DNA of 64,000 bases from IMGVR_UViG_3300037502_003770:124001-188000, one strand, 5' to 3'; positions 6,585 to 23,078 are shown, counted from the stretch's first letter. Numbers and translations are program-made. The notes: generated by a model from the sequence alone, not told the origin.

Positions 6585-6905
6585 ATGGAAGGTATTAAAC
6601 TAAAAGTAATTAATGAAATTATTGACTTAATAATATCTTGTAATAGAGGTAAGATTTATCATTTTGATAAATCATTTTTAACATATAATAAAATTAATAA
6701 TATTTATATTGAACATAAAATTATTGCTTTCTTAACAGGTGAAAATATGATTCGTTTTTATGATAATGGTAGTTTAATAGCAAGTGCGATATATTTTAGA
6801 AAATCTAATCAAAATTTAATTATTTATTTAAGTAAATTTACTTTACTTGATTTACAGTATTTAAAATTAATAATGAAACAAGCAAAAAATAGACCTTTTC
6901 AATGA
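6585..6905 (+). CDS. LLDLQ-family paralogue
   Basis: IKLKVINEII ... FTLLDLQYLK. Confidence 0.75.
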   Translation: MEGIKLKVINEIIDLIISCNRGKIYHFDKSFLTYNKINNIYIEHKIIAFLTGENMIRFYDNGSLIASAIYFRKSNQNLIIYLSKFTLLDLQYLKLIMKQAKNRPFQ

Positions 6906-7261
6906 CAGATATTAAAACAAAACAAATAGACATATTCATAAAAAATATTGAACTTTTAAGAAAAAGTCAAGAAAGAAAATATTCCGTAATTACATTTGAA
7001 TTAGATAATATTTATTTTAAATTTAGAGGTGAGAACAGAAAAAATAAGAATATATTAAAGAGAATAACTTACAATTTAAAAACATATAAATATCGAATTA
7101 TATATGGTGATAAAAATTGTATAACAAGTGATTTAATTATAAAAAAAGACTTTTTCTATATATTAGAAAATCTTTCAGTATTAGATTTATTTTATGTAAA
7201 TAACTGTTTAAAACAGGCTTTAATTAAAAAATTTAATTTTTCTTATGAAACCCTTGCTTGA
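6902..7261 (+). CDS. LLDLQ-family paralogue
   Basis: IKTKQIDIFI ... LSVLDLFYVN. Confidence 0.7.
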   Translation: MTDIKTKQIDIFIKNIELLRKSQERKYSVITFELDNIYFKFRGENRKNKNILKRITYNLKTYKYRIIYGDKNCITSDLIIKKDFFYILENLSVLDLFYVNNCLKQALIKKFNFSYETLA

Positions 7262-7298
7262 CCTCCAATACATACATTTAAAATTAACACAAAGTTAA
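7245..7298 (+). CDS. 17 aa motif-only micropeptide or remnant of the LLDLQ family
   Basis: MKPLLDLQYIHLKLTQS*. Confidence 0.4.
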   Translation: MKPLLDLQYIHLKLTQS

Positions 7299-7356
7299 CA
7301 TTGAAAGCTTGACAAAGTGCAAAATTCTTTATACCTTTGTAATAGGTAATTAAACT

Positions 7357-7614
7357 ATGGAAGACTATAAATTTGAGCCGATAATGATAGGAATACATGA
7401 CCGAATGTATCATAATTTGCTTGTTTCTACAATTATCCCTGAAATATATTCTAGTAAATTACCGATATTTATTCCATCGCCACCTGAAAAGATAAAACCT
7501 AATATTCCAAAAATAAAGCTTTCTGATATACTTTACTATCCAAAAATAAGTATAAAAGAACTAGTCTTACCTTACCACAAAACAAGCGAATTTAAAAACT
7601 TCTTTTTAACATAA
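7357..7614 (+). CDS. hypothetical Pro-rich protein
   Basis: Follows host-type promoter 7309-7339. Confidence 0.65.
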   Translation: MEDYKFEPIMIGIHDRMYHNLLVSTIIPEIYSSKLPIFIPSPPEKIKPNIPKIKLSDILYYPKISIKELVLPYHKTSEFKNFFLT

Positions 7615-7657
7615 AGAAGTCTTTTTTTGTAATATAAGTAACTTTTATTTTTAATAT

Positions 7658-7960
7658 ATGATTATGTCTTTAAAAGAAAAGATAATTAATAAAATAATAT
7701 CTTACATAAATAAGGTTGATAATTACATAAGATTAGTTTACTATATACCTGATTATTGTTATGATGAAAATATTTTATTGAGAACAGAAATTTTTATTTC
7801 TTTAATAGATGAATTTAGCTATTATTATAGTTTGTATCGTACTGAAGATAATAGAGAATTTGAAATTACTTTAACATATAAAGAACTTATTTCTTTATTA
7901 AATAAACTTTCTTTGTTGGAACTACAATTTATTTTAATAAAAACAAATGAAAAAAACTAA
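7658..7960 (+). CDS. LLDLQ-family paralogue
   Basis: LKEKIINKII ... LSLLELQFIL. Confidence 0.75.
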   Translation: MIMSLKEKIINKIISYINKVDNYIRLVYYIPDYCYDENILLRTEIFISLIDEFSYYYSLYRTEDNREFEITLTYKELISLLNKLSLLELQFILIKTNEKN

Positions 7961-8249
7961 ATTTTCTTTAAAAAAAGAACTTTCTTTGAAAATATATAAA
8001 TCTCTTTTTTCTCTTTTCGATTGTCAGAAAGATTATGCTATTGAAATTTTAGTTTTTAGTAAATTCTATATAAAAAGAAATAAATTTAATAGTATAGTAC
8101 TTTCTGGTGATAAAAAATTTGGTTTTTCATCTTTTTGTTATTCGTTTGCATATAATGAAAAAAAACAATTTTTAGATTTTATGGTTAAAGAATTTCATTT
8201 ACTTGAATTACAAGTTATATTAAGAACAGTAAAAAAATACGTATGGTGA
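7947..8249 (+). CDS. LLDLQ-family paralogue
   Basis: LKKELSLKI ... FHLLELQVIL. Confidence 0.75.
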   Translation: MKKTKFSLKKELSLKIYKSLFSLFDCQKDYAIEILVFSKFYIKRNKFNSIVLSGDKKFGFSSFCYSFAYNEKKQFLDFMVKEFHLLELQVILRTVKKYVW

Positions 8250-8530
8250 AAAAAACTAAATCTTATCTTAAAAAACAACTTTCTTTGAAAATAATTACTA
8301 TTTTGAATAAATTATTTTTAACAACTTCATTTCCTAAATATGTTGGTTTTAAATCTTTTAAAAATTATATATCTATTACTTACATAAGATTTAATTATTT
8401 AAAAATTGATATTGGTAATAACACAAGATATATGAGTAAAACCGAATTTATTTATACATTTATGACTGAATTTTCTTTAATTGAACTTCAATATATAAAA
8501 AATTATGTTAAAATATATTTTTCTTTTTGA
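8243..8530 (+). CDS. LLDLQ-family paralogue
   Basis: LKKQLSLKI ... FSLIELQYIK. Confidence 0.75.
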   Translation: MVKKTKSYLKKQLSLKIITILNKLFLTTSFPKYVGFKSFKNYISITYIRFNYLKIDIGNNTRYMSKTEFIYTFMTEFSLIELQYIKNYVKIYFSF

Positions 8531-8903
8531 AATAAAAACTTTTCCAATTATAGATTTTAATAAAAGAAATATTGATATTTTAAAAAAATCTCTTACTAAA
8601 GAAATATTATCATCTTTAAAAAAAGGTATTAAATATAAGTTTGCGATTTCTTATGCTTTAATATTTATTTTAGAAGAAAGAATACTCAGGGAATATCCTA
8701 AGTATTTATATGGCTTATTTAATGGTATATACCCTCCATCTCAACCACCAATATTAGATGAACATGGAAAAGAAGAAAAATATTATAATGAAATTAATAC
8801 TTTAGAAACATTTAAAAAAGACTTTTTAATAAATCAATCATTACTTGATTTACAATTTATTTTGAAAATAATTAAACAAACAAATGAAAAACATCTTAAT
8901 TGA
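8505..8903 (+). CDS. LLDLQ-family paralogue
   Basis: LKKSLTKEIL ... QSLLDLQFIL. Confidence 0.75.
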   Translation: MLKYIFLFEIKTFPIIDFNKRNIDILKKSLTKEILSSLKKGIKYKFAISYALIFILEERILREYPKYLYGLFNGIYPPSQPPILDEHGKEEKYYNEINTLETFKKDFLINQSLLDLQFILKIIKQTNEKHLN

Positions 8904-9498
8904 AAAGATTAAATATCTTTTAGAAGTAATTAAACTTAAAGAAATAACTATTTCTAATTGTAATTTTGTTTTAGATTTTTATAATATAAGTGGTTTTGAT
9001 TATAGATGTCCAAAATGGTATGATTTTTTTAATCATAATTATTATAGAAAATCTAACCCTGTTCTTGAAATAAAAATATTTACATCAAAAAAAGAAGTAC
9101 GTTTTAGAATAAAAGATTTACCAAGTATTTTTCGTAATGAAGTAATTACTTGTTATGTTTCTTTTGAAGCATTTTACAAAATCATGGAAAATATGTCTTT
9201 ACTTGATTTACAATTTATTAAAAGAAATCTTTCCAAAATAAAAAATCAACAGATTAAAAAAGATAAAAATAAAATAGTTAACAATATTATAGAAAAAATT
9301 AAATCATATAAAACTTATTTTTGTGTAAATAATGTTTATAATTCAACATTTGAATTTTATGTAAATAAAATTACTGTATTATCAATATCTTTATACATAA
9401 ATGATATACCATATAATTTTAAAGAATTAAAATGGGAACTAAAGAGGTTTCCGTTGCTTGACCTCCAATACATTGATAAAAGATTAACAATTTCTTAA
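8884..9498 (+). CDS. LLDLQ-family paralogue, two fused units
   Basis: MSLLDLQFIK and FPLLDLQYID, each preceded by its own N-helix. Confidence 0.75.
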   Translation: MKNILIEKIKYLLEVIKLKEITISNCNFVLDFYNISGFDYRCPKWYDFFNHNYYRKSNPVLEIKIFTSKKEVRFRIKDLPSIFRNEVITCYVSFEAFYKIMENMSLLDLQFIKRNLSKIKNQQIKKDKNKIVNNIIEKIKSYKTYFCVNNVYNSTFEFYVNKITVLSISLYINDIPYNFKELKWELKRFPLLDLQYIDKRLTIS

Positions 9499-9578: not shown

Positions 9579-10046
9579 ATGGCAGTAGGAAAAACTTTTG
9601 TCGAAAGTTTAATACATGAACAAAAAGACCTCAGACATAAAATTATATATTCGATAATTGGATATATAAATGATTCACCTCAAAAAAGGATTGAATTTTA
9701 TGGTACAGACCATGATATTAGGTTGAATATTAATCACCCTAATTATACTTCAGCAGTTCACGTAAAATTGCTGGAAATCTCAATGAATCCTAACTATGTA
9801 GTTACTACTAACTTATTTAGTGATTTAGATACTGATAGATATGATTTAGCTGATATTCATCACATTGATAATATTTTATCATTTAAAGTTAAAACTTTAG
9901 ATGATTTAAATCATTATTTAGTTTCTGATGAAGAATTTAGTAATGATTGGGAGAATGAAGATTCACCTTTAAGTTTCAATGATATATTCACAGATGATTT
10001 AATGGAGATATTAAATCGTTTGAGTTTATTAAACGAAACAGAATAA
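9579..10046 (+). CDS. hypothetical acidic protein
   Basis: Follows host-type promoter 9510-9540; terminator at 10063. Confidence 0.75.
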   Translation: MAVGKTFVESLIHEQKDLRHKIIYSIIGYINDSPQKRIEFYGTDHDIRLNINHPNYTSAVHVKLLEISMNPNYVVTTNLFSDLDTDRYDLADIHHIDNILSFKVKTLDDLNHYLVSDEEFSNDWENEDSPLSFNDIFTDDLMEILNRLSLLNETE

Positions 10047-10062
10047 ATATCTCTTTCAAAAG

Positions 10063-10103
10063 AAAATCCCTTTAACAAATAAAGGGATTTTTTATAATAT
10101 AAA
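10063..10103 (+). terminator. terminator hairpin with embedded class II promoter
   Basis: AAAATCCCTTT-aacaaat-AAAGGGATTTT; TTAACA at 10072, N17, TAATATAA. Confidence 0.7.
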
Positions 10104-10112: not shown

Positions 10113-10556
10113 ATGAAAACAACACTTTCCGAAAGAAAAGAATTACTTATTAAAGAAATAATATCTTTAATAAAAAACTTTGATTATTCAAAAATACATA
10201 ATTCAAGATGGAAGGGTATTCATTTTGTTGAAATTGATTATAATTTATCCGAAAGAGATACGTTTAAAATAAAATTAAATGATTTATTTAATATTCGTTA
10301 TAATTATTTTGAAAGAGAATATTATTTATATTGTATTGAATGTAAAGAAGATTTTTCATTTTTCATGAAGGAAAATAAATATAGAGAAGAAAGAAAATAT
10401 AAAATTTGGTACTACACTATAGAACCATATAAATCTGGAGAAGAACATCATTCAACCACTCTAACAATAAGACAATTTAAAAAGTTATTTAATAAAATGT
10501 GTTTACTTGAGTTATTTAGTATTAAGTTAAAAATAAAAAAATTAGGAAGTAAATAA
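10113..10556 (+). CDS. LLDLQ-family paralogue
   Basis: RKELLIKEII ... MCLLELFSIK. Confidence 0.75.
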   Translation: MKTTLSERKELLIKEIISLIKNFDYSKIHNSRWKGIHFVEIDYNLSERDTFKIKLNDLFNIRYNYFEREYYLYCIECKEDFSFFMKENKYREERKYKIWYYTIEPYKSGEEHHSTTLTIRQFKKLFNKMCLLELFSIKLKIKKLGSK

Positions 10557-10563
10557 TTTTACA

Positions 10564-10926
10564 ATGAAAAAAACTTTAGTTAAAATAAAACTAATTTTGA
10601 AAATTCTATTCTCAAGAATGGATAATACAAAAAGATTTATTATTGTAAGAATTAAACCTTACGATAATAATGTTTTTATTGTTAATGAAATACATATTGT
10701 TGAGAATTATGGTCGACATAAAGAAAAATATTTTAGATTTAGATTAACTTGTACCGATAATAATTACGATGAAATTTATCGTACCAATAATAGATTTAGA
10801 ATGTTTCCATATTTATATGATTTATCATTATCAGATTTACAGTTTATTAAAAAAAATATTGAATATGCTTATAGTAAAGATTATCTATCACCTAAAATTA
10901 ATGATTTCTTAACATTGAAACCTTGA
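10564..10926 (+). CDS. LLDLQ-family paralogue
   Basis: VKIKLILKI ... LSLSDLQFIK. Confidence 0.75.
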   Translation: MKKTLVKIKLILKILFSRMDNTKRFIIVRIKPYDNNVFIVNEIHIVENYGRHKEKYFRFRLTCTDNNYDEIYRTNNRFRMFPYLYDLSLSDLQFIKKNIEYAYSKDYLSPKINDFLTLKP

Positions 10927-10988
10927 CATTCTCAAGTAGATGTATTACCTTTACAGAAGTAATACAACCACTCAAACCCTTAATTCGT

Positions 10989-11741
10989 ATGTTAACCACA
11001 ATTGCACAGCCAAGCTTCTTAAAACTAGATTCTGACCTATTCTTGCCAGTATTTTATGTTAGTACTGAAGCAAATCCTACATATATGGATTTTTATCCTG
11101 AAATAATTAATTTCTTTTCAAGAAAATTACTTTTCTCAAAAAAAGAATTATTAAATCATATTGATTATGAAGATAATTATAAACTTCATAATCAAGATAT
11201 TCCTTTAGATAATAAAGGTTTCAGGAAACTTATTCTGAAAGGAATAAGAGAAGCTAGGGAATTAGAATCATATCAAAATCATATTTTCTATATTCATTTG
11301 AGAATAAAAGATGAAAGTTTTGAACCGAATCCTATACCTCATAAATTGTATATTGAAAATTTTGGCAACGAAAATATTGGTAATCGTTATGAAGTAACCT
11401 TTAATTTAACTTATCAAGATAGAGATATTAGTGAAGATATTTCTATTGTAAGAGCAGCTTTTCATAATATTGAAAACAATGAAAGAGTTACTAAAATTAA
11501 AGTTGTTAAACACTTTGATTTACCAATTAAATCACAAAAGTTTTTAATTTCAACAGAAAATAAAAATACAGGTTTAGTTCTTTATGTAGCTGGTAGTGAT
11601 AAACATAAATTCTTTCACTCAAGCAGTATAGACCAAGCAAGAAGATATACTCAAAAAGAAATAGATAAATTTCTCGATAAAGATATTCACTTTAAAGAAA
11701 AGTTTACTATTACAAAAGATTTCAACTCAATAAAATTTTAA
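10989..11741 (+). CDS. hypothetical protein (start moved to ATG 10989)
   Basis: The track's TTG start at 10923 is the TTGACA of its own promoter. Confidence 0.7.
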   Translation: MLTTIAQPSFLKLDSDLFLPVFYVSTEANPTYMDFYPEIINFFSRKLLFSKKELLNHIDYEDNYKLHNQDIPLDNKGFRKLILKGIREARELESYQNHIFYIHLRIKDESFEPNPIPHKLYIENFGNENIGNRYEVTFNLTYQDRDISEDISIVRAAFHNIENNERVTKIKVVKHFDLPIKSQKFLISTENKNTGLVLYVAGSDKHKFFHSSSIDQARRYTQKEIDKFLDKDIHFKEKFTITKDFNSIKF

Positions 11742-11745
11742 CCTT

Positions 11746-11922
11746 ATGGCAGAATTCCCTGAACACTTAATTAAATGGTTTAATAAAATAGATAGAGAAA
11801 ATAAACTTCATATTGAAATGAAGAATAAAAAATATGTGTTGTATTTTAATCGAAAAGATAAAAAACTTCAACCGATAACTCAATTTATTAAACTAACCAA
11901 AAAACACAGACGTAAATACTAA
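11746..11922 (+). CDS. small basic protein (58 aa, not in track)
   Basis: MAEFPEHLIKWFNKIDRENK...HRRKY*; fills the gap in an operon. Confidence 0.55.
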   Translation: MAEFPEHLIKWFNKIDRENKLHIEMKNKKYVLYFNRKDKKLQPITQFIKLTKKHRRKY

Positions 11923-11940
11923 ACAAAACATCTTTCAAAC

Positions 11941-12390
11941 ATGAAAAAATTAAAAAAAGAACTAATCTCTTCTTTAAATAATGATTTTACTTTAAAGGTA
12001 GTAGATTTTCTACAAGATGATGTAAATAAGATTTCTTTTTTAAGAAATTCTTTAAACTTAGATAAACTTGAATCTTACAAGTTTTGCAATACCCATCGAG
12101 GTTTAACATTATCTTTTCAAAAAAGACTTAATGATTTACCGATGACAATTCATATTGGAGTTAAAAGAATAGGTAAACCAAAACAATATGAACCTAATAA
12201 TTTTCATTATGAATTGAGGATTTATCATCGACATTTACATTTTGAAGATGAAAGATTAATCGAAACTTGTAAAAGAATTAAACGTTCTAAACATAGTCCG
12301 TATCATTATTATACAGTAAAAAAGCACCCTTATCTTGGTGCAACTCTTGAATCTTCAATAGAACGATTCTTAACTGAGTTAATAAAGTAA
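11941..12390 (+). CDS. hypothetical protein
   Basis: 149 aa ORF before a terminator. Confidence 0.7.
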   Translation: MKKLKKELISSLNNDFTLKVVDFLQDDVNKISFLRNSLNLDKLESYKFCNTHRGLTLSFQKRLNDLPMTIHIGVKRIGKPKQYEPNNFHYELRIYHRHLHFEDERLIETCKRIKRSKHSPYHYYTVKKHPYLGATLESSIERFLTELIK

Positions 12391-12395: not shown

Positions 12396-12451
12396 TTCTT
12401 TCCTTAAAAACCTTTCATTCTTAACAAATGAAAGGTTTTTTTGTATATAAT
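12396..12451 (+). repeat. ~55 bp terminator/class II promoter unit, duplicated at 19482-19536
   Basis: TTCTTTCCTTAAAAACCTTTCATTCTTAACAAATGAAAGGTTTTTTTGTATATAA in both places. Confidence 0.85.
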
Positions 12452-12454
12452 AGT

Positions 12455-12742
12455 ATGGAGGAGGTAAGACTTAATTTAATAAAAGAAATTGTAGAAAAAA
12501 ATAAATTATGTTATGTTTCTAATTTAGATTTATTTTATTTTTACAATATTAAATATAAAAATTCTTTAGTTATTGATATTAATAATCGTATTAATGAAAT
12601 AAAAAATATTTTTTATTTTAATGATTATTTTAAATCTTTTGATGATGAAAAAAATAACTTTAATAATATAAAATTATATCAGATATTAGAAACATTACCT
12701 TTATTAAAATTACAATTTATTAACCATTGTCTTTATGAGTAA
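12455..12742 (+). CDS. LLDLQ-family paralogue (start moved to ATG 12455)
   Basis: VRLNLIKEIV ... LPLLKLQFIN; track start lies inside the terminator. Confidence 0.7.
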   Translation: MEEVRLNLIKEIVEKNKLCYVSNLDLFYFYNIKYKNSLVIDINNRINEIKNIFYFNDYFKSFDDEKNNFNNIKLYQILETLPLLKLQFINHCLYE

Positions 12743-13163
12743 AGAACAACTTAAAACTAAAGAAATAGATTTAATAATTGATTTCTTTCTGAAAGAAAAT
12801 AGAAAGCTAGATATTATTAATAGACATACAAGCGCAAGTGGTCATGAATTTAAAGTAAAAAATCCTTTTAATCATAATAAATCAAATATATATAAACATT
12901 TTCTTTTTTCAATTAAATCAAAAGAACTACCGTATGATTTTGATGAAAGAAATATAAATGGTTTTATTTTTACTAAATTTAAAACTAGAAAAATATTTGT
13001 GTTAGAAATATGTTTAGTTAATGATAAAAATGAAAATATTGGAATTGATGATTATAATTATATAGAACTAGAAGTAAAAAAATATTTAAAATCAATGAGT
13101 TTACTTGATTTACAGTTCATTAAAAATAAATCTTTAAATGAAAATAACCCCTTACAAAAATAA
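12735..13163 (+). CDS. LLDLQ-family paralogue
   Basis: MSLLDLQFIK. Confidence 0.75.
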   Translation: MSKEQLKTKEIDLIIDFFLKENRKLDIINRHTSASGHEFKVKNPFNHNKSNIYKHFLFSIKSKELPYDFDERNINGFIFTKFKTRKIFVLEICLVNDKNENIGIDDYNYIELEVKKYLKSMSLLDLQFIKNKSLNENNPLQK

Positions 13164-13530: not shown

Positions 13531-13838
13531 AACTTATAATAGAAATAAATAATTCTATTCAAAAATTTAAATCTGTTAATTATAAACTTGATATATTATT
13601 AAATTCAAATATAAAAATATCTAAAATATATTATAATCATGATAATAGCAGGAAAAGGAAGTTTGAATTTTATTACTCATATAGAAATAATTATGAACAA
13701 AATATGTGTTATTCAAAATTTGATTTTTTAAATTTTTTATTTAAATTAAAATTACAAGATTTACAATACATTCATAATATAATTACATCTGAAAAAGATT
13801 TAAGTGATTTACGTATTCAATTAAGAAAATTATTATGA
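13505..13838 (+). pseudogene. LLDLQ-family paralogue with a +1 frameshift in an A6 run after ATG
   Basis: Removing one A gives MKNFLLKVKLIIEI...LKLQDLQYIH...RKLL*. Confidence 0.7.
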
Positions 13839-15469: not shown

Positions 15470-15513
15470 AAAATAACCATCTTTAACAAAAGATATGGTT
15501 TTTTGTATTATAT

Positions 15514-16214: not shown

Positions 16215-16518
16215 AAAGCAGTTAATTAAAAAAATAAAGAAATCTATTTTTAAAAGTAAAACCGTTGACCCTTCAGTTATTATTATTTCAAATAAAATAT
16301 CTTTATTAAGAAATAAAGATTTAACATATTTTAATATGCTTTCAATAGAAAGAAATATTTCAAATAAAATAACTTATATTAATTTTTTTAAATGGTTAAA
16401 TGATAATAGTTTAATTAGAATAACATATCTAAAATATCCAAGTTTAAATTATTTTCTTAATAAATTAACGATTCTTCAATTACAATCAATTCTAATAAAT
16501 TTAAAAAATGATGACTAA
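16144..16518 (+). CDS. LLDLQ-family paralogue
   Basis: IKKQLIKKIK ... LTILQLQSIL. Confidence 0.75.
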   Translation: MSIQFIALNIEKQEEKQKRLHIIKKQLIKKIKKSIFKSKTVDPSVIIISNKISLLRNKDLTYFNMLSIERNISNKITYINFFKWLNDNSLIRITYLKYPSLNYFLNKLTILQLQSILINLKNDD

Positions 16519-16819
16519 AGAAGAACTAAAAACTAAACTTATTTTAGATATTTATTATAATTTAAGATGTTGCTATGATTTTCATTTAAATTCAATTTGT
16601 TTATATAATAATATTAATTATAAAGGTGTTAATTTTAATAAATTGTTTTTAACAGTTAGAGAAGATATTAAATTAAAATATACTACTTATGAACATGATT
16701 ATACAATTAGTGAGATATATAATAAATGTATTTTCTTCAATGAACTAACAATACTTCAATTACAATTGATTTTAGTACATTTTAAACGAGTGGTCAATGA
16801 AAGAAGAGATAAAAAATAA
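16508..16819 (+). CDS. LLDLQ-family paralogue
   Basis: LKTKLILDIY ... LTILQLQLIL. Confidence 0.75.
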   Translation: MMTKEELKTKLILDIYYNLRCCYDFHLNSICLYNNINYKGVNFNKLFLTVREDIKLKYTTYEHDYTISEIYNKCIFFNELTILQLQLILVHFKRVVNERRDKK

Positions 16820-17183
16820 CATTATCAATAAAATAATGTATATAATAGAAAAAGTATATCTTTATTCAAAAGGAAATGATTATATAAATATTCCTTTAAA
16901 TAAAAATCATTTTATTTCTATCAATAATAAAATTTTTAACCATATTATTATAGACCCTGAAGACTTTGAAATATTATTGGTGAACATATTTGACGGTTTA
17001 TACAAAACAAAACGTAATGAAGTTATTCTTAAATCCAATTACTCAACATTTAATGAACATTTATTTAAACAATTTACTTTACTCCAGTTACAATACATAT
17101 TAATTGATTTAATTTCAAAAGAAAATAATCCTTCATTATTAAAAAATAGAATCAATCAGATATGGGAAAAGTATCCACAATAA
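16797..17183 (+). CDS. LLDLQ-family paralogue
   Basis: IKNNIINKIM ... FTLLQLQYIL. Confidence 0.75.
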   Translation: MKEEIKNNIINKIMYIIEKVYLYSKGNDYINIPLNKNHFISINNKIFNHIIIDPEDFEILLVNIFDGLYKTKRNEVILKSNYSTFNEHLFKQFTLLQLQYILIDLISKENNPSLLKNRINQIWEKYPQ

Positions 17184-17653
17184 AGAAAAATTTAATAAAA
17201 GAAGTTATAATTAAGGAAGCAACTTATTTTGTTGAAGAATTTTTATTAAAAAGAAAAATAAAAAAATTTAGTTTTATTAGAAATCATGAATTACTTTTAA
17301 ATTGTAAAAATTTTAAAAGTAAGTTAATTGGTGCTTATGATTATTCATATAACTTTTGTGAATACATACCTAAATATAATAAAACTTTATATTATTTAGA
17401 TGATATAAATATTAATTATTCTCATCGTAATCTTGGTGATATTTTTGAAGTTAAATTAAGATGTTTACCTTTTAATATAAAACATTTCTCTAATGATAGA
17501 TTTAATATGGATAAAGACACCTTTATAGAATTATTATCCACAACAAAAAATTTATTATATTTACAATATATAAATAAGAAAATACAAAGTATCGAACAAA
17601 ATTCTAATTTAATTAATAAACATTATGAGTCTGAGTTCTATTTTAATTGGTAA
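17162..17653 (+). CDS. LLDLQ-family paralogue
   Basis: IKKNLIKEVI ... KNLLYLQYIN. Confidence 0.75.
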   Translation: MGKVSTIKKNLIKEVIIKEATYFVEEFLLKRKIKKFSFIRNHELLLNCKNFKSKLIGAYDYSYNFCEYIPKYNKTLYYLDDININYSHRNLGDIFEVKLRCLPFNIKHFSNDRFNMDKDTFIELLSTTKNLLYLQYINKKIQSIEQNSNLINKHYESEFYFNW

Positions 17654-18000
17654 TAAAAATGATTTTAATTTCTATTCTTAAAATAAAAACTATTTTTCTA
17701 ATAATATATCTTTTATTAAAGAAAAATATTCATACTTACTTTAAAGTAATTAAAATAAATAAAGAATACACATATAGATATATTATTATAGGTAATTTTT
17801 ATTTTGTTAAAAATATTATTTACCTTACTAGAGAAGAATTTTTAAGTATAAAATTTTTGCCTATATTATTTAGTTTACCCTTATCTGATTTACATTATAT
17901 AAAAATTAAATTATCATTAGAAAAACCATATAAAGTAAAAAATTTACCAACAAATAAAACAGTCACCTTTATTCAAGGAAGACGCTTTTTTGCAAAATAG
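17647..18000 (+). CDS. LLDLQ-family paralogue (ATG at 17659 is an alternative start)
   Basis: LPLSDLHYIK. Confidence 0.7.
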   Translation: MVIKMILISILKIKTIFLIIYLLLKKNIHTYFKVIKINKEYTYRYIIIGNFYFVKNIIYLTREEFLSIKFLPILFSLPLSDLHYIKIKLSLEKPYKVKNLPTNKTVTFIQGRRFFAK

Positions 18001-18098: not shown

Positions 18099-18164
18099 AT
18101 GCTAAAAGGAAGAACAATAACCAAAGAAAGATTCAATCTTATTGAAGAAATTATTGAATTATAA
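18099..18164 (+). pseudogene. 5' fragment of an early gene interrupted by the TnpB insertion
   Basis: Host-type promoter 18035-18065, then MLKGRTITKERFNLIEEIIEL* ending where an A/T-only stretch begins; possible 3' remainder at ~19410-19475. Confidence 0.45.
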
Positions 18165-19410
18165 TAAATTATATAATATTTATATTAATAATTATTTTTT
18201 ACTATTTAATAATATACATTTAAATTAATGAAATTAATTCACAAAGGTTATAAATATAGAATCTACCCAAATAAAGAACAAACTGAATTGTTAAATAAAC
18301 ATTTTGGTTCTTGTAGATTTGTATTTAATTATTTCCTTAATTTAAAAATGAATACCTATAAACAAGAAAAGAAAAATCTAAATAATAATTATCTATCTTC
18401 ATTATTAACCCTTCTTAAAAAAGAACAGAATTATTCTTGGTTAAATGAAATTAATTCTCAAAGTTTGCAAGCTTCTTTAAAAAATGTTGACGTTGCTTAT
18501 GATAGGTTTTTTAAAAAGATAAGTCAATATCCAAAATTTAAAAGTAAAAATGATAAACAAAGTTTTAAAGTACCACAGTTTTTAACTATTGAAAATGATT
18601 TATTATATTTGCCTAAATTTAAGAAAGGAATTAAAATAAATATTCATAGAGATTTTAAAGGAAAGATTTTATATGGAACTGTATCAAAAACACCAACAGG
18701 TAAATATTATGTATCTATCACTTGTAAACAAGAATATATTCCTTTTGAAAAGACAGGTTCTATTATAGGAATTGATACTGGTATTAAAGATTTAGCTATC
18801 CTTTCAGATAAAACTGTTTATGAAAATAAAAAGGTTTTAAAGAAGAGGATAAAGAAAATAAAATATAAACAAAGGCAATTAAGTAAGAAAGTAAAAGGTA
18901 GCAAGAGTAGGATAAAACAAAGGAATAAACTTGCAATAGAACATGAGAAAGTAGTAAATATTAGAAAAGATTATTTACATAAAGTAAGTACAGAAATTAT
19001 CAAAAACCACGATATTATATGTATTGAAGACCTTTCAATAAAAAACATGATGAAGAACCATAAATTAGCGCAAGCATTTTCTGATGCAAGTTTAGGTACA
19101 TTCTATGATATGTTAGAATATAAAGCTTCTTTTAATGAGAAGAAAATTATTAAGATAGGAAGATTTTTTGCAAGTAGTAAAACTTGTTCAAAATGTAATT
19201 ATATTAATGAGGAATTAACATTAAAGGATAGGGAATGGACTTGCAAAGGTTGTGGCACGTTGCATGATAGAGATTATAATGCAAGTATAAATATTAAAAA
19301 CGAAGGTTTAAAGATATTATCTGGTTTGGGTTGCAAGTCGGATATAAAACAAAAAGTGATGGAGGCGTTTCCGTTAGGAGAGTCAATGAAATCATATATT
19401 TAGAAATAAA
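18165..19410 (+). mobile_element. IS200/IS605-family element, solo TnpB (IS1341-like), boundaries approximate
   Basis: TnpB ORF without TnpA, interrupting a promoter-gene-terminator unit. Confidence 0.65.
18228..19403 (+). CDS. tnpB: RNA-guided endonuclease TnpB
   Basis: HTH_OrfB start YKYRIYPNKEQ..FGSCRFVFN; RuvC-I GIDTG, RuvC-II IEDL, zinc finger CSKC/CKGC, RuvC-III HDRDYNASINI. Confidence 0.95.
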   Translation: MKLIHKGYKYRIYPNKEQTELLNKHFGSCRFVFNYFLNLKMNTYKQEKKNLNNNYLSSLLTLLKKEQNYSWLNEINSQSLQASLKNVDVAYDRFFKKISQYPKFKSKNDKQSFKVPQFLTIENDLLYLPKFKKGIKINIHRDFKGKILYGTVSKTPTGKYYVSITCKQEYIPFEKTGSIIGIDTGIKDLAILSDKTVYENKKVLKKRIKKIKYKQRQLSKKVKGSKSRIKQRNKLAIEHEKVVNIRKDYLHKVSTEIIKNHDIICIEDLSIKNMMKNHKLAQAFSDASLGTFYDMLEYKASFNEKKIIKIGRFFASSKTCSKCNYINEELTLKDREWTCKGCGTLHDRDYNASINIKNEGLKILSGLGCKSDIKQKVMEAFPLGESMKSYI

Positions 19411-19542
19411 TACAACATGGAGAAAATCCTGATTTTAATATCAATAAAATAAGCCTTGAATTGAACCCTCAATAAAACAATTTCTTTCCTTAAAAACCTT
19501 TCATTCTTAACAAATGAAAGGTTTTTTTGTATATAAAATAGT

Positions 19543-19788
19543 ATGGTAAAGGAAAAATCCGATTTATTGAAAGAAAATCTTATTAAAGAAATAATATTGA
19601 TTAAGTCCGAATCTGAATCAAAAAATATTCCGTCAGGTTCTATTTTAAAACTTATTATTTTTTATAATCCAACTTATAATTTAACTGTTATAAAATTTAA
19701 AAATAAAAGTATTAAAATTATTAAAAATAAATTATTTACATATAATTATGGTCATAGTAGTTCAATACATAAAACAATCTATCATTAA
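19543..19788 (+). CDS. LLDLQ-family paralogue, probably deleted or frameshifted near the C-terminus
   Basis: LKENLIKEII present; C-motif missing in frame but VVQYIK...* appears in another frame at ~19757-19813. Confidence 0.55.
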   Translation: MVKEKSDLLKENLIKEIILIKSESESKNIPSGSILKLIIFYNPTYNLTVIKFKNKSIKIIKNKLFTYNYGHSSSIHKTIYH

Positions 19789-19812
19789 AGAAAATAAACT
19801 TTTGAATTCGTA

Positions 19813-20136
19813 ATGAAAGAAAATCTTATTGAAAAAATATTTTCCCTTGAATGGAAAATACCTAAAAATAATTATGTATATCTTAATAAAGGAAATTTTC
19901 GTTCAAACAAATATTCACTAAATGCAATAAAAATAGAAAATAAAGAAATACTCATACACTATAAAAATAAATATTATGATATATATTTTTATGATGAAGT
20001 AACAACATTAGAAAAAAAGAATGTTCTTAAATCTTTATCTATTTTAGATTTACAATTTATTTTTCTATTTCTAAATTCAGAAAAAAATCAAAAACCTATT
20101 AATATGAAATTAAATTTTGATTCCATACCTAGATAA
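19813..20136 (+). CDS. LLDLQ-family paralogue
   Basis: MKENLIEKIF ... LSILDLQFIF. Confidence 0.8.
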   Translation: MKENLIEKIFSLEWKIPKNNYVYLNKGNFRSNKYSLNAIKIENKEILIHYKNKYYDIYFYDEVTTLEKKNVLKSLSILDLQFIFLFLNSEKNQKPINMKLNFDSIPR

Positions 20137-20147
20137 AATATATTCTT

Positions 20148-20453
20148 ATGAAAGAAAAATTAATTCAAGAAATATTGAATCTTGTTAAAAATACAAGAAA
20201 AGATTTTATTAACGATATTACTAACCCTTTTATCACTAATATCTATTATATAGACCCTGTATATGGCACTCGTAAAATATATTTAATGGATATAGTTGAT
20301 ATAGATATATACCAAATTATTACTGTAAAAAATTTAAATCTAGGTGATGATTATCGTAGTATAATTAATAAAACAGAAATAATAAGAATATTAAACCTTG
20401 TTTCATTATTAGACCTGCAATATATTCTATTATTATTAAAAAAATTTTTATGA
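20148..20453 (+). CDS. LLDLQ-family paralogue
   Basis: MKEKLIQEIL ... VSLLDLQYIL. Confidence 0.8.
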   Translation: MKEKLIQEILNLVKNTRKDFINDITNPFITNIYYIDPVYGTRKIYLMDIVDIDIYQIITVKNLNLGDDYRSIINKTEIIRILNLVSLLDLQYILLLLKKFL

Positions 20454-20752
20454 AAGAAATACTCCTTAAAGAAATAACCTCACTCCTTAAAGAAAAAGAT
20501 TTTACTTTAAAAAGTAACAATTATTATACTATTAATCTAAACCTTAAAAAAATACAAAATAAAGAATATTATTATTTCCTAAGAAATATACATTATAATA
20601 AAAATAATAATTCCTATATTCTAACATACAGTTTTAAAAATCAAACTCATCTAACAGATGATTATATCACACTTAAAAATAAAAATATAACCAAATATAT
20701 AAAACATATTTCCCTTCTTGATTTGCAATTTATAAAATTATCTCTTTTATGA
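20450..20752 (+). CDS. LLDLQ-family paralogue
   Basis: MKEILLKEIT ... ISLLDLQFIK. Confidence 0.8.
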   Translation: MKEILLKEITSLLKEKDFTLKSNNYYTINLNLKKIQNKEYYYFLRNIHYNKNNNSYILTYSFKNQTHLTDDYITLKNKNITKYIKHISLLDLQFIKLSLL

Positions 20753-20982
20753 AAGAAAAACTTATTCAAGAAATAAAAGATATTATTGAAAAATATGACC
20801 TTCATTATATGACAATATATACAGATATATATAAATTATCAAACCATATAAAAACTAATCGTACTCTAATGAAAGAAGTTTTCCTTTCTGATTTAAAAGA
20901 ATTTAACTTACTTGAATTGCAATTTACTTCTATAAAAATAAAAAATGATGCAAATAAACAAAGAAAAAATATCTTTTCTTAA
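20749..20982 (+). CDS. LLDLQ-family paralogue (short insert)
   Basis: MKEKLIQEIK ... FNLLELQFTS. Confidence 0.8.
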   Translation: MKEKLIQEIKDIIEKYDLHYMTIYTDIYKLSNHIKTNRTLMKEVFLSDLKEFNLLELQFTSIKIKNDANKQRKNIFS

Positions 20983-21295
20983 AGAAAAATCTTTACTTAA
21001 ATTTAAAAACCTTTTGGAATCACATAATAATTATGAAAATATCCTTAATTTTAGATATTATGTAAAACAAAAACATGGAGAAATTATAGGATATCCAAAA
21101 CCAATTTTAATAAATAATTATTATACTATACTTGAACTAAGAAAAAAACATTATACCTTATATACCCTACTTTATAAAACCACAAAAGAAAATAAATATA
21201 TATTCAAAGATTATAACCTTAATAAAATTATGAAAATATTTAAAAATATATCACTTCTTGACCTCCAATTTATTCTAATTCATATCAAAAAATAA
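20945..21295 (+). CDS. LLDLQ-family paralogue
   Basis: ISLLDLQFILIHIK. Confidence 0.8.
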   Translation: MMQINKEKISFLKEKSLLKFKNLLESHNNYENILNFRYYVKQKHGEIIGYPKPILINNYYTILELRKKHYTLYTLLYKTTKENKYIFKDYNLNKIMKIFKNISLLDLQFILIHIKK

Positions 21296-21306
21296 AACTT
21301 AATTAT

Positions 21307-21651
21307 ATGGATATATCACTTCTTAAAGAAAACCTTTTTAATCAAATATATAACATACTTGAAAAACAAAAAGAATTAGAATTAACAACACCCAATATTT
21401 ATATAAAATTTTTAGATGCTCATTCTATACATAATAAAAACCTATACCTACTAAAACTAAAATATCTAAATTCAAATAAAAAATATGAACTCCATTATAA
21501 ATATGATTATGATGGTAGTAATTTAAACCATTATAGAGTAAATTATTTAACAATTCAAGGAAAAGATATTTTATTGAAATCTATATCCTTACTTGACTTG
21601 CAATTTATTCTAATTCATATCAAAAACCGCTCACAATCAATTCAAATTTAA
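21307..21651 (+). CDS. LLDLQ-family paralogue
   Basis: LKENLFNQIY ... ISLLDLQFILIHIK. Confidence 0.8.
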   Translation: MDISLLKENLFNQIYNILEKQKELELTTPNIYIKFLDAHSIHNKNLYLLKLKYLNSNKKYELHYKYDYDGSNLNHYRVNYLTIQGKDILLKSISLLDLQFILIHIKNRSQSIQI

Positions 21652-21702
21652 AAAGGATATTCCACTACCAAAATATATTCTTCTCTTAAAATAACCATTT
21701 TT

Positions 21703-21981
21703 ATGAAAGAAAAAGATTTTATTAAAGAAAAACTCTTTAAACAAATAAAATACTATATTAAAAAATATCAACTTTGTTATATCCCATACACAGGTATTAA
21801 TGATTTACATAATATAAATAAAAACTCACCAACATATAAAATGTTTATTCATAATATAAATGAACTCCTTTCAAAAATAAAAACATTCCCACTATCAGAT
21901 TTAATCTTTCTAAAAAACCAAATTAAAAATGATGCACTCAAAAATAAAACAAAAACTAATAAATCAAATTCTTTCACCTAA
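21703..21981 (+). CDS. LLDLQ-family paralogue
   Basis: IKEKLFKQIK ... FPLSDLIFLK. Confidence 0.75.
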   Translation: MKEKDFIKEKLFKQIKYYIKKYQLCYIPYTGINDLHNINKNSPTYKMFIHNINELLSKIKTFPLSDLIFLKNQIKNDALKNKTKTNKSNSFT

Positions 21982-22345
21982 TAATAATCTAGTTGATAAT
22001 AAACATAATGTAGTAATAAGATATACCTCCGTTAATAACCCTAAACTCTATAATATAAAATTCTTTAATAAAGAAAAAACAACACATTACTCACTAAATG
22101 AACTCTCAATTAATAAACTCTTTATTAATACAAAAAAAATTAAAAGACATATAATAATTTATCAAAATAATTACCACCTTAAACCAATAACAATATCTCA
22201 TAAAAAATATATACACTCTTACCTAAACCTTATCCCACTACTTGACCTGCTCTTTATTAAAAATCTAATAATAAAAGAAAATAATAGAATAAAAAATTCT
22301 ATATTAAGAAATACTTTACTACTAGATAAACTTAAAAATGAATAA
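21929..22345 (+). CDS. LLDLQ-family paralogue
   Basis: IKQKLINQIL ... IPLLDLLFIK. Confidence 0.75.
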   Translation: MMHSKIKQKLINQILSPNNNLVDNKHNVVIRYTSVNNPKLYNIKFFNKEKTTHYSLNELSINKLFINTKKIKRHIIIYQNNYHLKPITISHKKYIHSYLNLIPLLDLLFIKNLIIKENNRIKNSILRNTLLLDKLKNE

Positions 22346-22595
22346 AATAACCTTTATTAAAAATACTCTTATTAAAGATATAAATAATTATAAAAATAAA
22401 TCACTTTCTCTTAATATAGAAAATTGTACATTTAAAATAAATAATACCTTATATAAATTAGAATTTTTTCAATATGGTGAAATATGTTATAGTACAAATG
22501 GTTGCTATACTTTCTTAAAAGATGATATTTTTTTATCTAAAATATCTTTACTCGACTTGCAATATATCCTTTTAAAAATGAAATCTTCTTTATGA
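22338..22595 (+). CDS. LLDLQ-family paralogue
   Basis: IKNTLIKDIN ... ISLLDLQYIL. Confidence 0.8.
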   Translation: MNKITFIKNTLIKDINNYKNKSLSLNIENCTFKINNTLYKLEFFQYGEICYSTNGCYTFLKDDIFLSKISLLDLQYILLKMKSSL

Positions 22596-22825
22596 AAGAA
22601 AAACTTGCCCTAAATATCCTACATACTATAAATCATTATAACCTTTTAAATAAAAAAATCCTTTATAATAATTTAATTTATGATTTTAAATCTTTTTATA
22701 CCATACTAGATTTTCAAGACCTACCCTTACTTGAACTACAATATTTGAAAATATTCCTTAAAACGATTGCAACCTATGGAAAAAATTACTCTTATTGGAA
22801 AAATTCTATCCCTTCTGAAAAATAA
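22592..22825 (+). CDS. LLDLQ-family paralogue (short insert)
   Basis: MKEKLALNIL ... LPLLELQYLK. Confidence 0.75.
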   Translation: MKEKLALNILHTINHYNLLNKKILYNNLIYDFKSFYTILDFQDLPLLELQYLKIFLKTIATYGKNYSYWKNSIPSEK

Positions 22826-23078
22826 AAACTTCTCACTAATAAAAAATAATAACCTAAAATTTATTTTAACTAATCAATATAATGGCTCATTATATTTCAT
22901 CTCTTATAATAATGTAAACAGTTATTATTATATACATTATTTTTACAATAATGACACCCATTTAACTACTGACTCTATTACAGAAAAAGAACTTTATTCA
23001 TACCTACTCTCTATGAATCTACTTGATATTCTCTTTATAAAATCTTATCTTATTAAAAATTCTATATATTACAGTTAG
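22767..23078 (+). CDS. LLDLQ-family paralogue (ATG at 22776 likely)
   Basis: EKITLIGKIL ... MNLLDILFIK. Confidence 0.75.
   Translation: MQPMEKITLIGKILSLLKNKNFSLIKNNNLKFILTNQYNGSLYFISYNNVNSYYYIHYFYNNDTHLTTDSITEKELYSYLLSMNLLDILFIKSYLIKNSIYYS

What the first reader, a model, noticed from the sequence alone, without database searches (positions are those of the whole stretch)
6585..23078. Array of ~37 hypervariable paralogues sharing only two terminal helices (LLDLQ family): candidate new system
About 37 small genes fill most of 16.5 kb. Most are 77-163 aa, one is a double unit and two are damaged. Each has an N-terminal K-x-x-(L/I)I-x-(E/K)I helix and a C-terminal (S/P/T/N)-L-L-(D/E/Q)-L-Q-(F/Y)-I helix around a Tyr/Ile/Lys/Asn-rich middle that I cannot align by eye, even between neighbours. 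Genes overlap in translationally coupled runs, and each run starts at a class II promoter. Codons in the motif vary synonymously (TTA GAT, CTT GAT, CTT GAC), so selection is on the protein. Inference: a library of adaptors with a constant docking module and variable target-binding inserts, by analogy with F-box/SOCS-box logic, for example recruiting diverse host defence proteins to one hub or protease. I recognise no named family.
Basis: partly seen in the sequence, partly recalled or inferred. Interest (0 to 1): 0.9.

Follow-up and report, generated by a model that had tools for sequence, protein, structure and literature searches.

The report
Expanded small-protein family in jumbo phage
An uncultured 313-kb phage, probably of a Bacteroidota host, spends 16.5 kb on 37 tandem copies of an undescribed ~100-residue protein whose two ends are conserved and whose middle differs in every copy; it is probably a battery of host-interaction proteins, but its function is untested.

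Summary
Window 6585-23078 (+ strand) carries 37 members of one protein family. One is a fused double unit, one lacks a start codon and one is truncated. They sit in six overlapping-gene runs, each behind a hairpin plus a TTAACA-N17/18-TA(T/A)(T/A)AT promoter.

Members share an N-terminal K-x-x-L-I-x-x-I helix and a C-terminal (S/N/P/T)-L-L-(D/E/Q)-L-Q-(F/Y)-I module. The motif codons vary synonymously. The middles (21-100 aa) are not alignable pairwise.

No member matches Pfam, PHROGs, NCBIfam, PADLOC or PDB sequences. A profile search of 1.84 billion representative proteins found 51 hits, all with the same signature, in this phage or close relatives.

Orthologues in relatives are 67-98% identical, with dN/dS about 0.2 (C module) to 0.5 (middle). 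Gene content of the array differs between otherwise near-identical phages.

Two AlphaFold2 models (pLDDT 69 and 76) give helix, β-meander, helix, helix. The (S/N/P/T)-L-L-(D/E/Q) stretch fits a helix N-capping box. Fold matches are weak; both models put PUR/Whirly (PC4-like) proteins on top.

Best reading: a lineage-specific expansion of a new small scaffold that displays variable surfaces and is used in phage-host conflict. The hub-adaptor idea is neither shown nor excluded.

The parts
6585..23078 (+). Whole array: 37 family genes in six runs, interrupted by five non-family genes and one TnpB element
6551..6580 (+). Run A promoter (TTAACT-N17-TATTAT) after terminator-like hairpin 6521-6549
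6585..7261 (+). Run A, 2 members: 6585-6905, 6902-7261
7606..7636 (+). Run B promoter (TTAACA-N18-TAATATA)
7658..9498 (+). Run B, 5 genes: 7658-7960, 7947-8249, 8243-8530, 8505-8903, 8884-9498
8884..9498 (+). Natural fusion of two units (204 aa, C motif at residues 106 and 191). It is kept in relatives L002/L003 at 89% identity, dN/dS 0.35.
10072..10101 (+). Run C promoter (TTAACA-N17-TAATATA); the -35 lies in the loop of a hairpin
10113..12390 (+). Run C: members 10113-10556 and 10564-10926, then co-directional non-family genes 10923-11741 (272 aa), 11746-11922 and 11941-12390
12406..12449 (+). Run D hairpin (12406-12440) and promoter (TTAACA 12421-12426, TATATA 12444-12449). Its first 45 bases are identical to those of 19492-19542, which differs only by two extra A before the ATG.
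12455..15469 (+). Run D, 9 members: 12455-12742 (mechanical ORF starts at 12428, inside the hairpin), 12735-13163, 13138-13530, 13509-13838 (no start codon), 13835-14236, 14233-14592, 14567-14857, 14844-15152, 15128-15469
13509..13838 (+). Full-length member with both motifs but no ATG/GTG/TTG before 13704. It is either a pseudogene or is started by an unusual codon or by reinitiation.
15483..15512 (+). Run E promoter (TTAACA-N17-TATTATA)
15514..18000 (+). Run E, 7 members: 15514-15801, 15798-16214, 16144-16518, 16508-16819, 16797-17183, 17162-17653, 17647-18000
18099..18164 (+). 21-codon ORF carrying only the N-helix motif, behind a class I promoter (18035-18065). It ends 10 nt before the TnpB unit and looks like the stump of a member.
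   Evidence: the stump reading is inference
18174..19419 (+). TnpB-only IS605-type unit (TnpB gene 18228-19403). It is not part of the family. The same unit (96.8% identical) sits at another array position in relative L002.
19492..19535 (+). Run F hairpin (19492-19526) and promoter (TTAACA 19507-19512, TATATA 19530-19535)
19543..23078 (+). Run F, 12 members: 19543-19788 (truncated), 19813-20136, 20148-20453, 20450-20752, 20749-20982, 20945-21295, 21307-21651, 21703-21981, 21929-22345, 22338-22595, 22592-22825, 22767-23078
7357..7614 (+). Non-family gene inside the array, behind class I promoter 7309-7339 (TTGACA-N17-TACCTTTG)
9579..10046 (+). Non-family acidic 155-aa gene behind class I promoter 9510-9540. 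Its ends look family-like by eye, but the match is not significant (hhalign probability 2%).

Best explanation
This is a lineage-specific tandem expansion of a new small single-domain protein in an uncultured ~313-kb phage that most likely infects a Bacteroidota host. There are 37 copies here, and more types across the clade.

Predicted architecture: an amphipathic N-terminal helix, then a β-meander of variable length and sequence (median 56 aa), then a short helix, then a longer helix that begins at an N-capping box. I infer that the three helices form the constant scaffold and probably an oligomerisation surface. I also infer that the β-sheet and its loops are the surface that differs in every paralogue.

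Expression. The genes are made in six polycistronic, overlapping-gene runs from a promoter class of their own. That class is distinct from the host-type promoters of the regulatory and replication genes and from the motif in front of the large tail-like genes.

Proposed mechanism (inferred). The paralogues act as stoichiometric binders, each presenting a different surface. Together they form a battery against variable host factors (defence or takeover targets) that is gained and lost gene by gene as hosts change.

Shown: the family, its limits, its restriction to one clade, purifying selection on each retained copy, fast turnover of array content, and the promoter classes.

Inferred: the fold details, dimerisation, the ligand class and the conflict role.
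For: Family and limits.

Clade restriction: 51 hits among 1.84 billion representatives, all with the same signature. There is no match in 50,697 phage records. There is no recurrent hit in Pfam, PHROGs, NCBIfam, PADLOC or PDB sequences.

Functional genes: pooled dN/dS against orthologues is 0.38 for the N helix, 0.50 for the middle and 0.21 for the C module. No pair is significantly above 1.

Turnover: neighbours outside the array include genes 93-99% identical between relatives. Inside the array, members are inserted, deleted, replaced or fused.

Structure: two members give the same predicted topology, with pLDDT 69 and 76.

Conservation pattern: hydrophobic faces plus S/N/P/T at the cap in 82 of 84 sequences and D/E/Q three residues later in 78 of 84.

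A fused double unit is stably kept, which is compatible with units working in pairs.

Own promoter class.

Precedents: about 35 copies of a zinc ribbon in Bacillus phage G (PMC7824862); accordion-like expansions in arms races (PMC13359090).
Against: - There is no direct evidence for any ligand or for a role in conflict.
- No positive selection is detectable between orthologues.
- All paralogues are old (at most 41% identity), so this is not a recent accordion.
- The models are of moderate confidence and are weakest in the middle.
- Members with a 21-33 aa middle cannot have the same sheet as the 55-aa majority.
- Residue-identity conservation in the helices suggests a constraint beyond the fold.
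- The family is more basic (median pI 9.4 against 7.0, p = 0.03) and more aromatic than its neighbours. The only recurring fold hits are nucleic-acid binders. Both points favour the nucleic-acid rival.
Confidence: 0.4

Rival explanations
1. The proteins are PC4/PUR/Whirly-like half-domains that dimerise and bind single-stranded DNA or RNA through the β-sheet. The expansion then supplies many specific regulators or structural nucleic-acid-coating proteins, as proposed for the zinc-ribbon expansion of phage G.
For: - Foldseek on two independently modelled members puts the same fold class on top: PURA repeats I-II (E 7e-3, probability 0.96), Pur-alpha with DNA, PBF-2 and WHY1-3 (both models), plus StWhy2 and MRP1/2.
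- That class is built from β-β-β-β-α units that either dimerise or are fused. The phage T5 member is β-β-β-β-α-α (PMC7549692). This parallels the single units and the fused double unit here.
- The family is basic and aromatic-rich relative to its neighbours.
Against: - TM-scores are only 0.3-0.38 and no hit reaches E 1e-3.
- Only three strands are confidently predicted, and there is an extra N-terminal helix.
- No member hits a PurA, Whirly, PC4 or related Pfam model.
- The presumed binding sheet is the least conserved part.
- Five of the 36 members scored are acidic or neutral.
- Fast gain and loss between near-identical phages is odd for regulators.
Confidence: 0.2
2. One reading: the constant helices dock every paralogue on one hub (a protease, RNA polymerase or other phage or host machine), and the variable middle recruits a different target to it.
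For: Residue-identity conservation at both ends (3-4 bits at nine positions), with synonymous codon variation, beside middles that have lost all similarity. The C module is under the tightest constraint (dN/dS 0.21).
Against: - The conserved positions are nearly all hydrophobic or helix-capping. Only K in the N helix and Q in the last helix are conserved polar residues.
- The first two turns of the last helix are hydrophobic on more than one face, as expected for a buried helix.
- No candidate hub is identifiable. The well-conserved 272-aa protein co-transcribed in run C is itself clade-restricted and unannotated.
- No member is fused to another domain among the 51 relatives.
Confidence: 0.12
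3. The proteins are packaged internal (ejection) proteins. A constant terminal signal targets them into the prohead and they are injected with the DNA to neutralise host nucleases, like the T4 internal proteins.
For: T4 internal proteins are described as a highly diverse set of counter-defence proteins sharing only a capsid targeting sequence. IPI* is a small compact protein of β-sheets flanked by N- and C-terminal helices, and the lysines of the internal proteins contact the packaged DNA (PMC3012670). Here the proteins are small, Lys-rich and basic. The conserved N helix starts at residue 2 in many members, and the locus turns over quickly.
Against: - The runs use a promoter class different from the TACTATTTA motif in front of the large genes at 34.9-59 kb, one of which is weakly baseplate-hub-like.
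- The N helix lies 20-25 residues into the ORF as called in two members (13835, 16144), and 11-13 residues in two more.
- A Glu that could serve as a protease P1 site follows the motif in only 35 of 80 sequences.
- The strongest conservation is C-terminal, which has no counterpart in T4.
- IPI* is not among the top 50 fold matches.
Confidence: 0.12
4. The genes encode immunity or superinfection-exclusion proteins (an orphan-immunity-like array), or are decaying, functionless duplicates.
For: Tandem arrays of divergent small genes with gain and loss are typical of immunity islands (my own knowledge). Two to three copies here are damaged.
Against: No toxin or effector partner genes are seen in or near the array. 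No immunity-family match was found. dN/dS is below 1 in nearly all retained copies, and reading frames are intact in 34 of 37, which argues against junk.
Confidence: 0.08

Closest known systems
Lineage-specific expansion of a small zinc ribbon (about 35 copies) in Bacillus phage G (Iyer et al. 2021, PMC7824862)
   Same: A jumbo phage with some 35-37 copies of one small domain that is restricted to its lineage. Function is unknown; it was proposed to be specific regulators or DNA-binding proteins.
   Different: The fold is unrelated: there is no zinc ligand pattern here. This family has constant ends with an unalignable middle, sits in one contiguous array of translationally coupled runs, and has documented gene-by-gene turnover between close relatives.
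PC4-like fold class (PC4, Pur-alpha, Whirly/PBF-2, MRP1/2, phage T5 PC4-like protein; PMC7549692)
   Same: Small β-sheet-then-helix units with no sequence conservation across the class. They work as dimers or as fused pairs. They are the best, though weak, fold matches for both models. The proteins here are basic and aromatic-rich.
   Different: There is an extra N-terminal helix and only three confident strands. TM-scores are below 0.4, there is no sequence-profile match, and nucleic-acid binding is untested.
T4 internal proteins IPI, IPII, IPIII with the capsid targeting sequence (PMC3012670)
   Same: The logic is a constant terminal signal plus a hypervariable small basic protein, in a fast-changing cluster. 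IPI* has helices flanking β-sheets and blocks a host restriction enzyme.
   Different: Here both ends are conserved and the C end more strongly. There is no consistent protease site, the promoter class differs from that of the putative structural genes, and there is no homology.
Multigene families and genomic accordions of large eukaryotic DNA viruses (poxviruses, ASFV MGF families; PMC13359090 and my own knowledge)
   Same: Tandem paralogue arrays with gain and loss between strains, tied to host-range and counter-defence functions.
   Different: The copies here are all anciently diverged (at most 41% identity). There is no sign of recent amplification, and the setting is prokaryotic.
F-box / SOCS-box substrate adaptors
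   Same: A short helical constant module combined with variable binding parts. The (S/T/P)-L-x-x-x pattern at a helix start superficially recalls the BC box (recalled from memory, so a lead only).
   Different: The hubs (Skp1, Elongin BC) are eukaryotic. No such domain is detected by Pfam, and the S ... D/E pattern is explained by a helix N-capping box.

Membership tests
Lineage-specific tandem expansion of a small protein in a jumbo phage (kind, not a homology family) | Tens of paralogues of one domain in one large phage genome | tested here: met
   37 members lie within 16.5 kb of a 312,694-bp viral contig.
Lineage-specific tandem expansion of a small protein in a jumbo phage (kind, not a homology family) | Family absent or rare outside the lineage | tested here: met
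   51 hits at E <= 1e-3 among 1.84 billion representatives, all with the same signature; most map to this phage or to related contigs L002-L004 at 77-100% identity, and about a dozen are more divergent paralogue types (28-56%). None was found in INPHARED phages.
PC4-like fold class (PUR, Whirly, PC4) | β-β-β-β-α unit topology | tested here: inconclusive
   AlphaFold2 gives three confident strands, preceded by a low-confidence stretch, then two helices, plus an extra N-terminal helix.
PC4-like fold class (PUR, Whirly, PC4) | Significant structural superposition on a member | tested here: not met
   The best hit is PURA repeats I-II at E 7e-3 and TM 0.38. No hit reaches E 1e-3.
PC4-like fold class (PUR, Whirly, PC4) | Sequence-profile match to PurA, Whirly, PC4 or related Pfam families | tested here: not met
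   No such family appears among the hits of 36 or 68 members, even at E up to 10.
PC4-like fold class (PUR, Whirly, PC4) | Dimer of two units (or fused pair) and single-stranded nucleic-acid binding | not testable with these tools
   One natural fused pair exists (8884-9498), which is suggestive only. No multimer prediction or assay was available.
T4-type internal proteins | Targeting signal at the extreme N terminus followed by a prohead-protease site with Glu at P1 | tested here: not met
   The motif starts at residue 2 in many members but 20-25 residues into the ORF as called in two (13835, 16144) and 11-13 residues in two more. Glu occupies the candidate position in 35 of 80 sequences.
T4-type internal proteins | Presence in virions and co-expression with head genes | tested here: inconclusive
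   The promoter class differs from that of the putative tail/baseplate genes. No proteome or transcriptome is available.
F-box / SOCS-box type adaptors | Recognisable box domain and a cognate hub encoded by phage or host | tested here: not met
   There is no Pfam match. The hubs are eukaryotic proteins (established knowledge).
Any described protein family | Profile or sequence match | tested here: not met
   Pfam, PHROGs, NCBIfam and PADLOC give only singleton chance-level hits. The best PDB sequence match has E 8.4.

The most novel reading that the evidence does not exclude
The conserved three-helix handle is an assembly or docking device. It would let dozens of paralogues pair with each other or load onto one phage or host machine (possibly the prohead), so that the phage deploys a combinatorial, rapidly exchangeable library of variable β-sheet surfaces. 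That would be a phage-encoded binder repertoire with a common chassis, for which no bacterial-virus precedent of this size is described.
Probability: 0.2. Interest if true: 0.85.

Novelty: new variant of a known kind. Interest (0 to 1): 0.6.

Why it matters
About 5% of a 313-kb phage genome is given to one family that has no relative outside its clade. Each retained copy is kept under purifying selection, yet the set changes between near-identical phages. That combination is typical of loci at the phage-host interface.

If the members are counter-defence or takeover proteins, the array is a ready-made collection of several dozen new inhibitors built on one small scaffold, from Bacteroidota phages, a group with few characterised anti-defence proteins (my own knowledge).

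If instead they are PC4-like nucleic-acid binders, it would be the largest expansion of that fold in a virus.

Either way, the constant-ends, variable-middle design makes it a tractable system for studying how a small fold tolerates complete resurfacing.

Tried and rejected
- The search for related loci with the family alignment failed because no 7-10-column conserved stretch exists.
- Scans of IMG/VR with the helicase, the 272-aa array gene and the sigma-like gene returned only the source contig.
- Both metagenome-contig scans found nothing.
- Megablast and tblastn against 50,697 phage records found nothing for the array or for a member. The only hit was a short TnpB stretch.
- The 272-aa gene co-transcribed in run C was tested as a possible hub. 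It has only two clade-restricted relatives and no domain.
- The genes at 9579-10046 and 6184-6495 look family-like at their ends by eye, but hhalign probabilities are 2% and 0.3%, so they are not counted.
- TnpB relatives in bacterial genomes carry no family genes in their flanks.
- Mutual information between the N-helix and C-module columns gave one pair (N+14 with C+10) just above a permutation null that ignores phylogeny. This is inconclusive.
- The neighbour effect on paralogue similarity is weak (Spearman -0.08), so there is no evidence of recent tandem duplication.
- Positive selection: several pairs have pN/pS at or above 1 (two with dN/dS above 1), but none is significant.
- A bacterial sliding-clamp-binding motif was considered for L-L-D-L-Q-F and rejected from memory. 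The invariant Gln is in the wrong position, and the motif lies in a predicted buried helix.
- AcrIIA4 (recalled as α-β-β-β-α-α) and T4 IPI* do not appear among the top 50 fold matches.

Full report
**What is there**

The + strand between 6585 and 23078 is almost completely filled by small ORFs. A regex for the C-terminal motif found it in 33 consecutive ORFs, always 12-40 residues from the end, and twice in the 204-aa ORF at 8884-9498.

A MAFFT alignment of 36 ORFs (A1) has nearly invariant K, I and L columns at the two ends. I built an HMM from A1 and ran it over all 280 ORFs of at least 40 aa, on both strands, of the window and three related contigs. It splits them cleanly. Family members score E < 3e-5 and everything else scores E > 0.1. 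No member lies elsewhere in the 64-kb window, nor in the 7 kb upstream of it.

The count is 37 in six runs:
- Run A: 2 members, from 6585.
- Run B: 5 members, from 7658, the last one a fused double unit.
- Run C: 2 members, from 10113, followed by three non-family genes.
- Run D: 9 members, from 12455.
- Run E: 7 members, from 15514.
- Run F: 12 members, from 19543.

Three copies are damaged or unusual. The frame 13509-13838 is a full-length member without any ATG/GTG/TTG before 13704. The gene at 19543-19788 lacks the C module present in its 107-aa orthologue. A 21-codon ORF at 18099-18164 carries only the N-helix motif and ends 10 nt before a TnpB insertion.

**More than chance, and selection on the protein**

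The motif codons differ synonymously from gene to gene, so the repeat is not a DNA repeat. Against orthologues in related contigs, pooled dN/dS is 0.38 for the N helix, 0.50 for the middle, 0.21 for the C module and 0.60 for the tail. Individual pairs range from 0.15 to about 1 or above, and none is significantly above 1. Most neighbouring non-family genes give 0.04-0.33. The copies are therefore functional genes under relaxed purifying selection, including their middles.

**The middle**

I cut out the middles and compared them alone. They show essentially no pairwise similarity: mean z is 0.22 against shuffles, 9% of pairs exceed z 2, and only 12455/15514 and 20450/22767 are clearly related. 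Full-length BLAST identities of 20-41% between paralogues are carried by the ends.

Middle length runs from 21 to 100 aa with a median of 56. The Lys/Asn/Ile/Tyr richness mostly mirrors the 18-23% G+C of the region. Even so, the family is more basic (median pI 9.4 against 7.0, p = 0.03) and more aromatic (14.5% against 11.9%) than the other proteins of the window.

**Genome and host**

The window is bases 124001-188000 of IMGVR_UViG_3300037502_003770, a 312,694-bp viral contig. Few genes are recognisable:
- a UvrD-type helicase at 29566-31461;
- a weakly sigma-like protein at 3020-4267;
- four large proteins with DUF4116 repeats;
- a weak baseplate-hub match at 51489-52418;
- a TnpB gene.

Four lines of evidence point to a Bacteroidota host:
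- Genes are not preceded by Shine-Dalgarno sequences.
- Three perfect and several near-perfect TTGACA-N17-TAnCTTTG sites contain the Bacteroidota -7 element TAnnTTTG (my knowledge of that consensus). They precede the sigma-like gene, the helicase and other non-family genes.
- The helicase's nearest cultured-phage relatives are Bacteroides and Flavobacterium phages, at about 26% identity.
- The closest TnpB relatives (68-70%) lie on short contigs binned to Bacteroidales, Flavobacteriales and Sphingobacteriales, though also to Sedimentibacter and Acholeplasmataceae.

**Promoter classes**

I see three upstream motif classes.
- Class I is the host-like motif above.
- Class II is a hairpin, a T-run and TTAACA-N17/18-TA(T/A)(T/A)AT, with the -35 hexamer in the hairpin loop and the ATG only 4-8 nt after the -10. 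It precedes each of the six runs and also the gene at 5012. The strict pattern has 4 matches against 0.94 expected.
- Class III is TACTATTTA, in front of the large genes between 34.9 and 59 kb and of TnpB.

The array is thus expressed as a unit of its own. Which factor reads class II, and when, is not known.

**Distribution**

No member matches a known family. Pfam, PHROGs, NCBIfam and PADLOC give only singleton hits at chance level, and a profile search of PDB sequences gives nothing.

A word-indexed search of 5.8 billion proteins found three foreign relatives. An exhaustive HMMER search of 1.84 billion cluster representatives found 51 proteins at E <= 1e-3. All are 75-203 aa, all carry the same two motifs, and none is fused to another domain.

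**Comparison with relatives**

Contigs L002/L003 (first third of the array), L077 (second half) and L004 (last fifth) come from close relatives. Outside the array several genes are 93-99% identical; the sigma-like protein is 99.3% identical. Inside it, orthologues are 67-98% identical, and individual members are present in one phage and absent from or replaced in another.

Two examples:
- L002 lacks the window's 7947 and 8243 genes and has a TnpB unit there.
- L077 has four extra members where the window has TnpB plus the truncated 19543 gene.

The 1.25-kb TnpB unit is 96.8% identical in its two different positions. The clade's pan-array is therefore larger than 37.

**Structure**

AlphaFold2, using the paralogue alignments, gave the same topology for two members that are 29% identical:
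- helix 3-20, strands 46-54, 59-67 and 74-81, helices 83-92 and 95-112 (pLDDT 69);
- helix 2-15, strands 41-50, 55-63 and 68-76, helices 77-84 and 89-99 (pLDDT 76, pTM 0.62).

The stretch after the first helix is of low confidence in both.

Foldseek found nothing at E <= 1e-3 in the PDB or BFVD. The top PDB hits of both models nevertheless belong to one class: PURA repeats I-II (E 7e-3, probability 0.96, TM 0.38), Pur-alpha with DNA, PBF-2 and WHY1-3 in both, plus StWhy2 and MRP1/2. According to PMC7549692 this PC4-like class has no sequence conservation. It is built from β-β-β-β-α units that dimerise or are fused, and it includes a phage T5 protein with β-β-β-β-α-α units. This is a lead, not a membership.

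**Reading the conserved positions**

In 80-84 non-identical sequences the N helix conserves K (95%), then L, I and I (95%) at +3, +4 and +7.

The C module has:
- hydrophobic positions at -9, -6, -5 and -2;
- S/N/P/T at -1 (98%);
- L, L, D/E/Q (93%), L, Q (80%), F/Y, I at 0 to +6;
- a further hydrophobic position at +10.

The -1 residue and the acidic or amide residue three positions later sit exactly where both models start the last helix. That is the classical helix N-capping box with a hydrophobic staple (established knowledge of helix capping). So most of the motif has a structural explanation.

The degree of conservation (3-4 bits, i.e. residue identity rather than class) still contrasts with total loss of similarity in the middle. 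It suggests an extra constraint such as mutual assembly or a common partner. A covariation test between the two ends was inconclusive.

**Mechanism**

I commit, at 0.4, to a battery of small binders on a constant helical scaffold that display variable β-sheet surfaces and are used against variable host factors. I think they probably act as dimers, because of the stable natural fusion and the overlapping-gene co-production of neighbours.

The main rivals are:
- PC4-like nucleic-acid binders (0.2);
- packaged internal proteins in the manner of T4, whose internal proteins are described as a highly diverse set of defence proteins sharing only a capsid targeting sequence (PMC3012670) (0.12);
- immunity proteins or junk (0.08).

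**Comparison with the known, and novelty**

The phenomenon has precedents. There is a ~35-copy zinc-ribbon expansion in Bacillus phage G (PMC7824862). There are also the expanding and contracting gene families of large DNA viruses (PMC13359090).

The family itself is undescribed, as are its constant-ends, variable-middle design, its dedicated promoter and terminator cassettes and its documented gene-by-gene turnover. I therefore rate it a new variant of a known kind.

**Limits**

- There are no coordinates, multimer models or AlphaFold DB searches.
- Only four related contigs were recovered.
- The models are weakest where the biology is most interesting.
- The host, the timing of expression and any ligand are all inferred.

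Noticed in passing
window 18174-19419; L002 12025-13272: A 1.25-kb TnpB-only IS605-type unit, 96.8% identical, sits at different positions of the array in two related phages. In the window it is associated with the loss of several members that relative L077 still has. It is preceded by the class III motif TACTATTTA.
   Followed up: partly
window 23400-24050: The 1.16-kb non-coding stretch just after the array holds about ten copies of an iteron-like motif, CTA(T/C)AG(T/C)ACTTTTTTT, plus several inverted repeats. It coincides with a flip of GC skew from -0.35 (20-24 kb) to +0.18. It could be an origin or a regulatory region.
   Followed up: partly
window 2960-2990, 4289-4319, 7309-7339, 9510-9540, 18035-18065 and upstream of 5495, 24237, 25057, 26454, 27451, 29566, 31939: A host-like promoter class (TTG...N...TAnCTTTG) is followed by a 35-45-nt leader that often contains AACCTTAA or CCCTTAAAC. 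It precedes the regulatory and replication genes.
   Followed up: partly
window 34924, 37207, 47002, 52426, 53987, 58924 (+ strand); 46224, 46987 (- strand): The motif TACTATTTA lies directly upstream of the large genes of the right half of the window, which look like tail/baseplate genes. It is a candidate late promoter element (9 matches against 5.1 expected).
   Followed up: no
window 12406-12454 and 19492-19542: The first 45 bases of these two terminator-hairpin-plus-promoter cassettes are identical; the second has two extra A before the ATG. The mechanical ORF start at 12428 lies inside the hairpin, so the real start is probably 12455.
   Followed up: yes
window 32837-34345, 34949-36511, 37237-42216, 55837-58236: Four large proteins (502-1659 aa) carry DUF4116 repeats and nothing else recognisable. 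This may be a second paralogous set in the same phage.
   Followed up: no
window 6184-6495 and 9579-10046: Two non-family genes share a near-identical 5' leader (CCCTTAAACACATACCG) and begin M-A. The second is acidic and ends with an L-S-L-L-N stretch that resembles the family cap. Similarity to the family is not significant.
   Followed up: yes
L077 5851-6279 and 6137-6631: In a relative, the orthologues of 20945 and 21929 are longer (142 and 164 aa) and overlap by about 140 nt. The orthologue of 21307 appears to be missing or merged. This is another case of fusion or rearrangement inside the array.
   Followed up: no
window 20000-24000: The last run of the array has strongly negative GC skew and uses C-ending Leu and Asp codons (CTT, CTC, GAC) more often than the earlier runs.
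   Followed up: no
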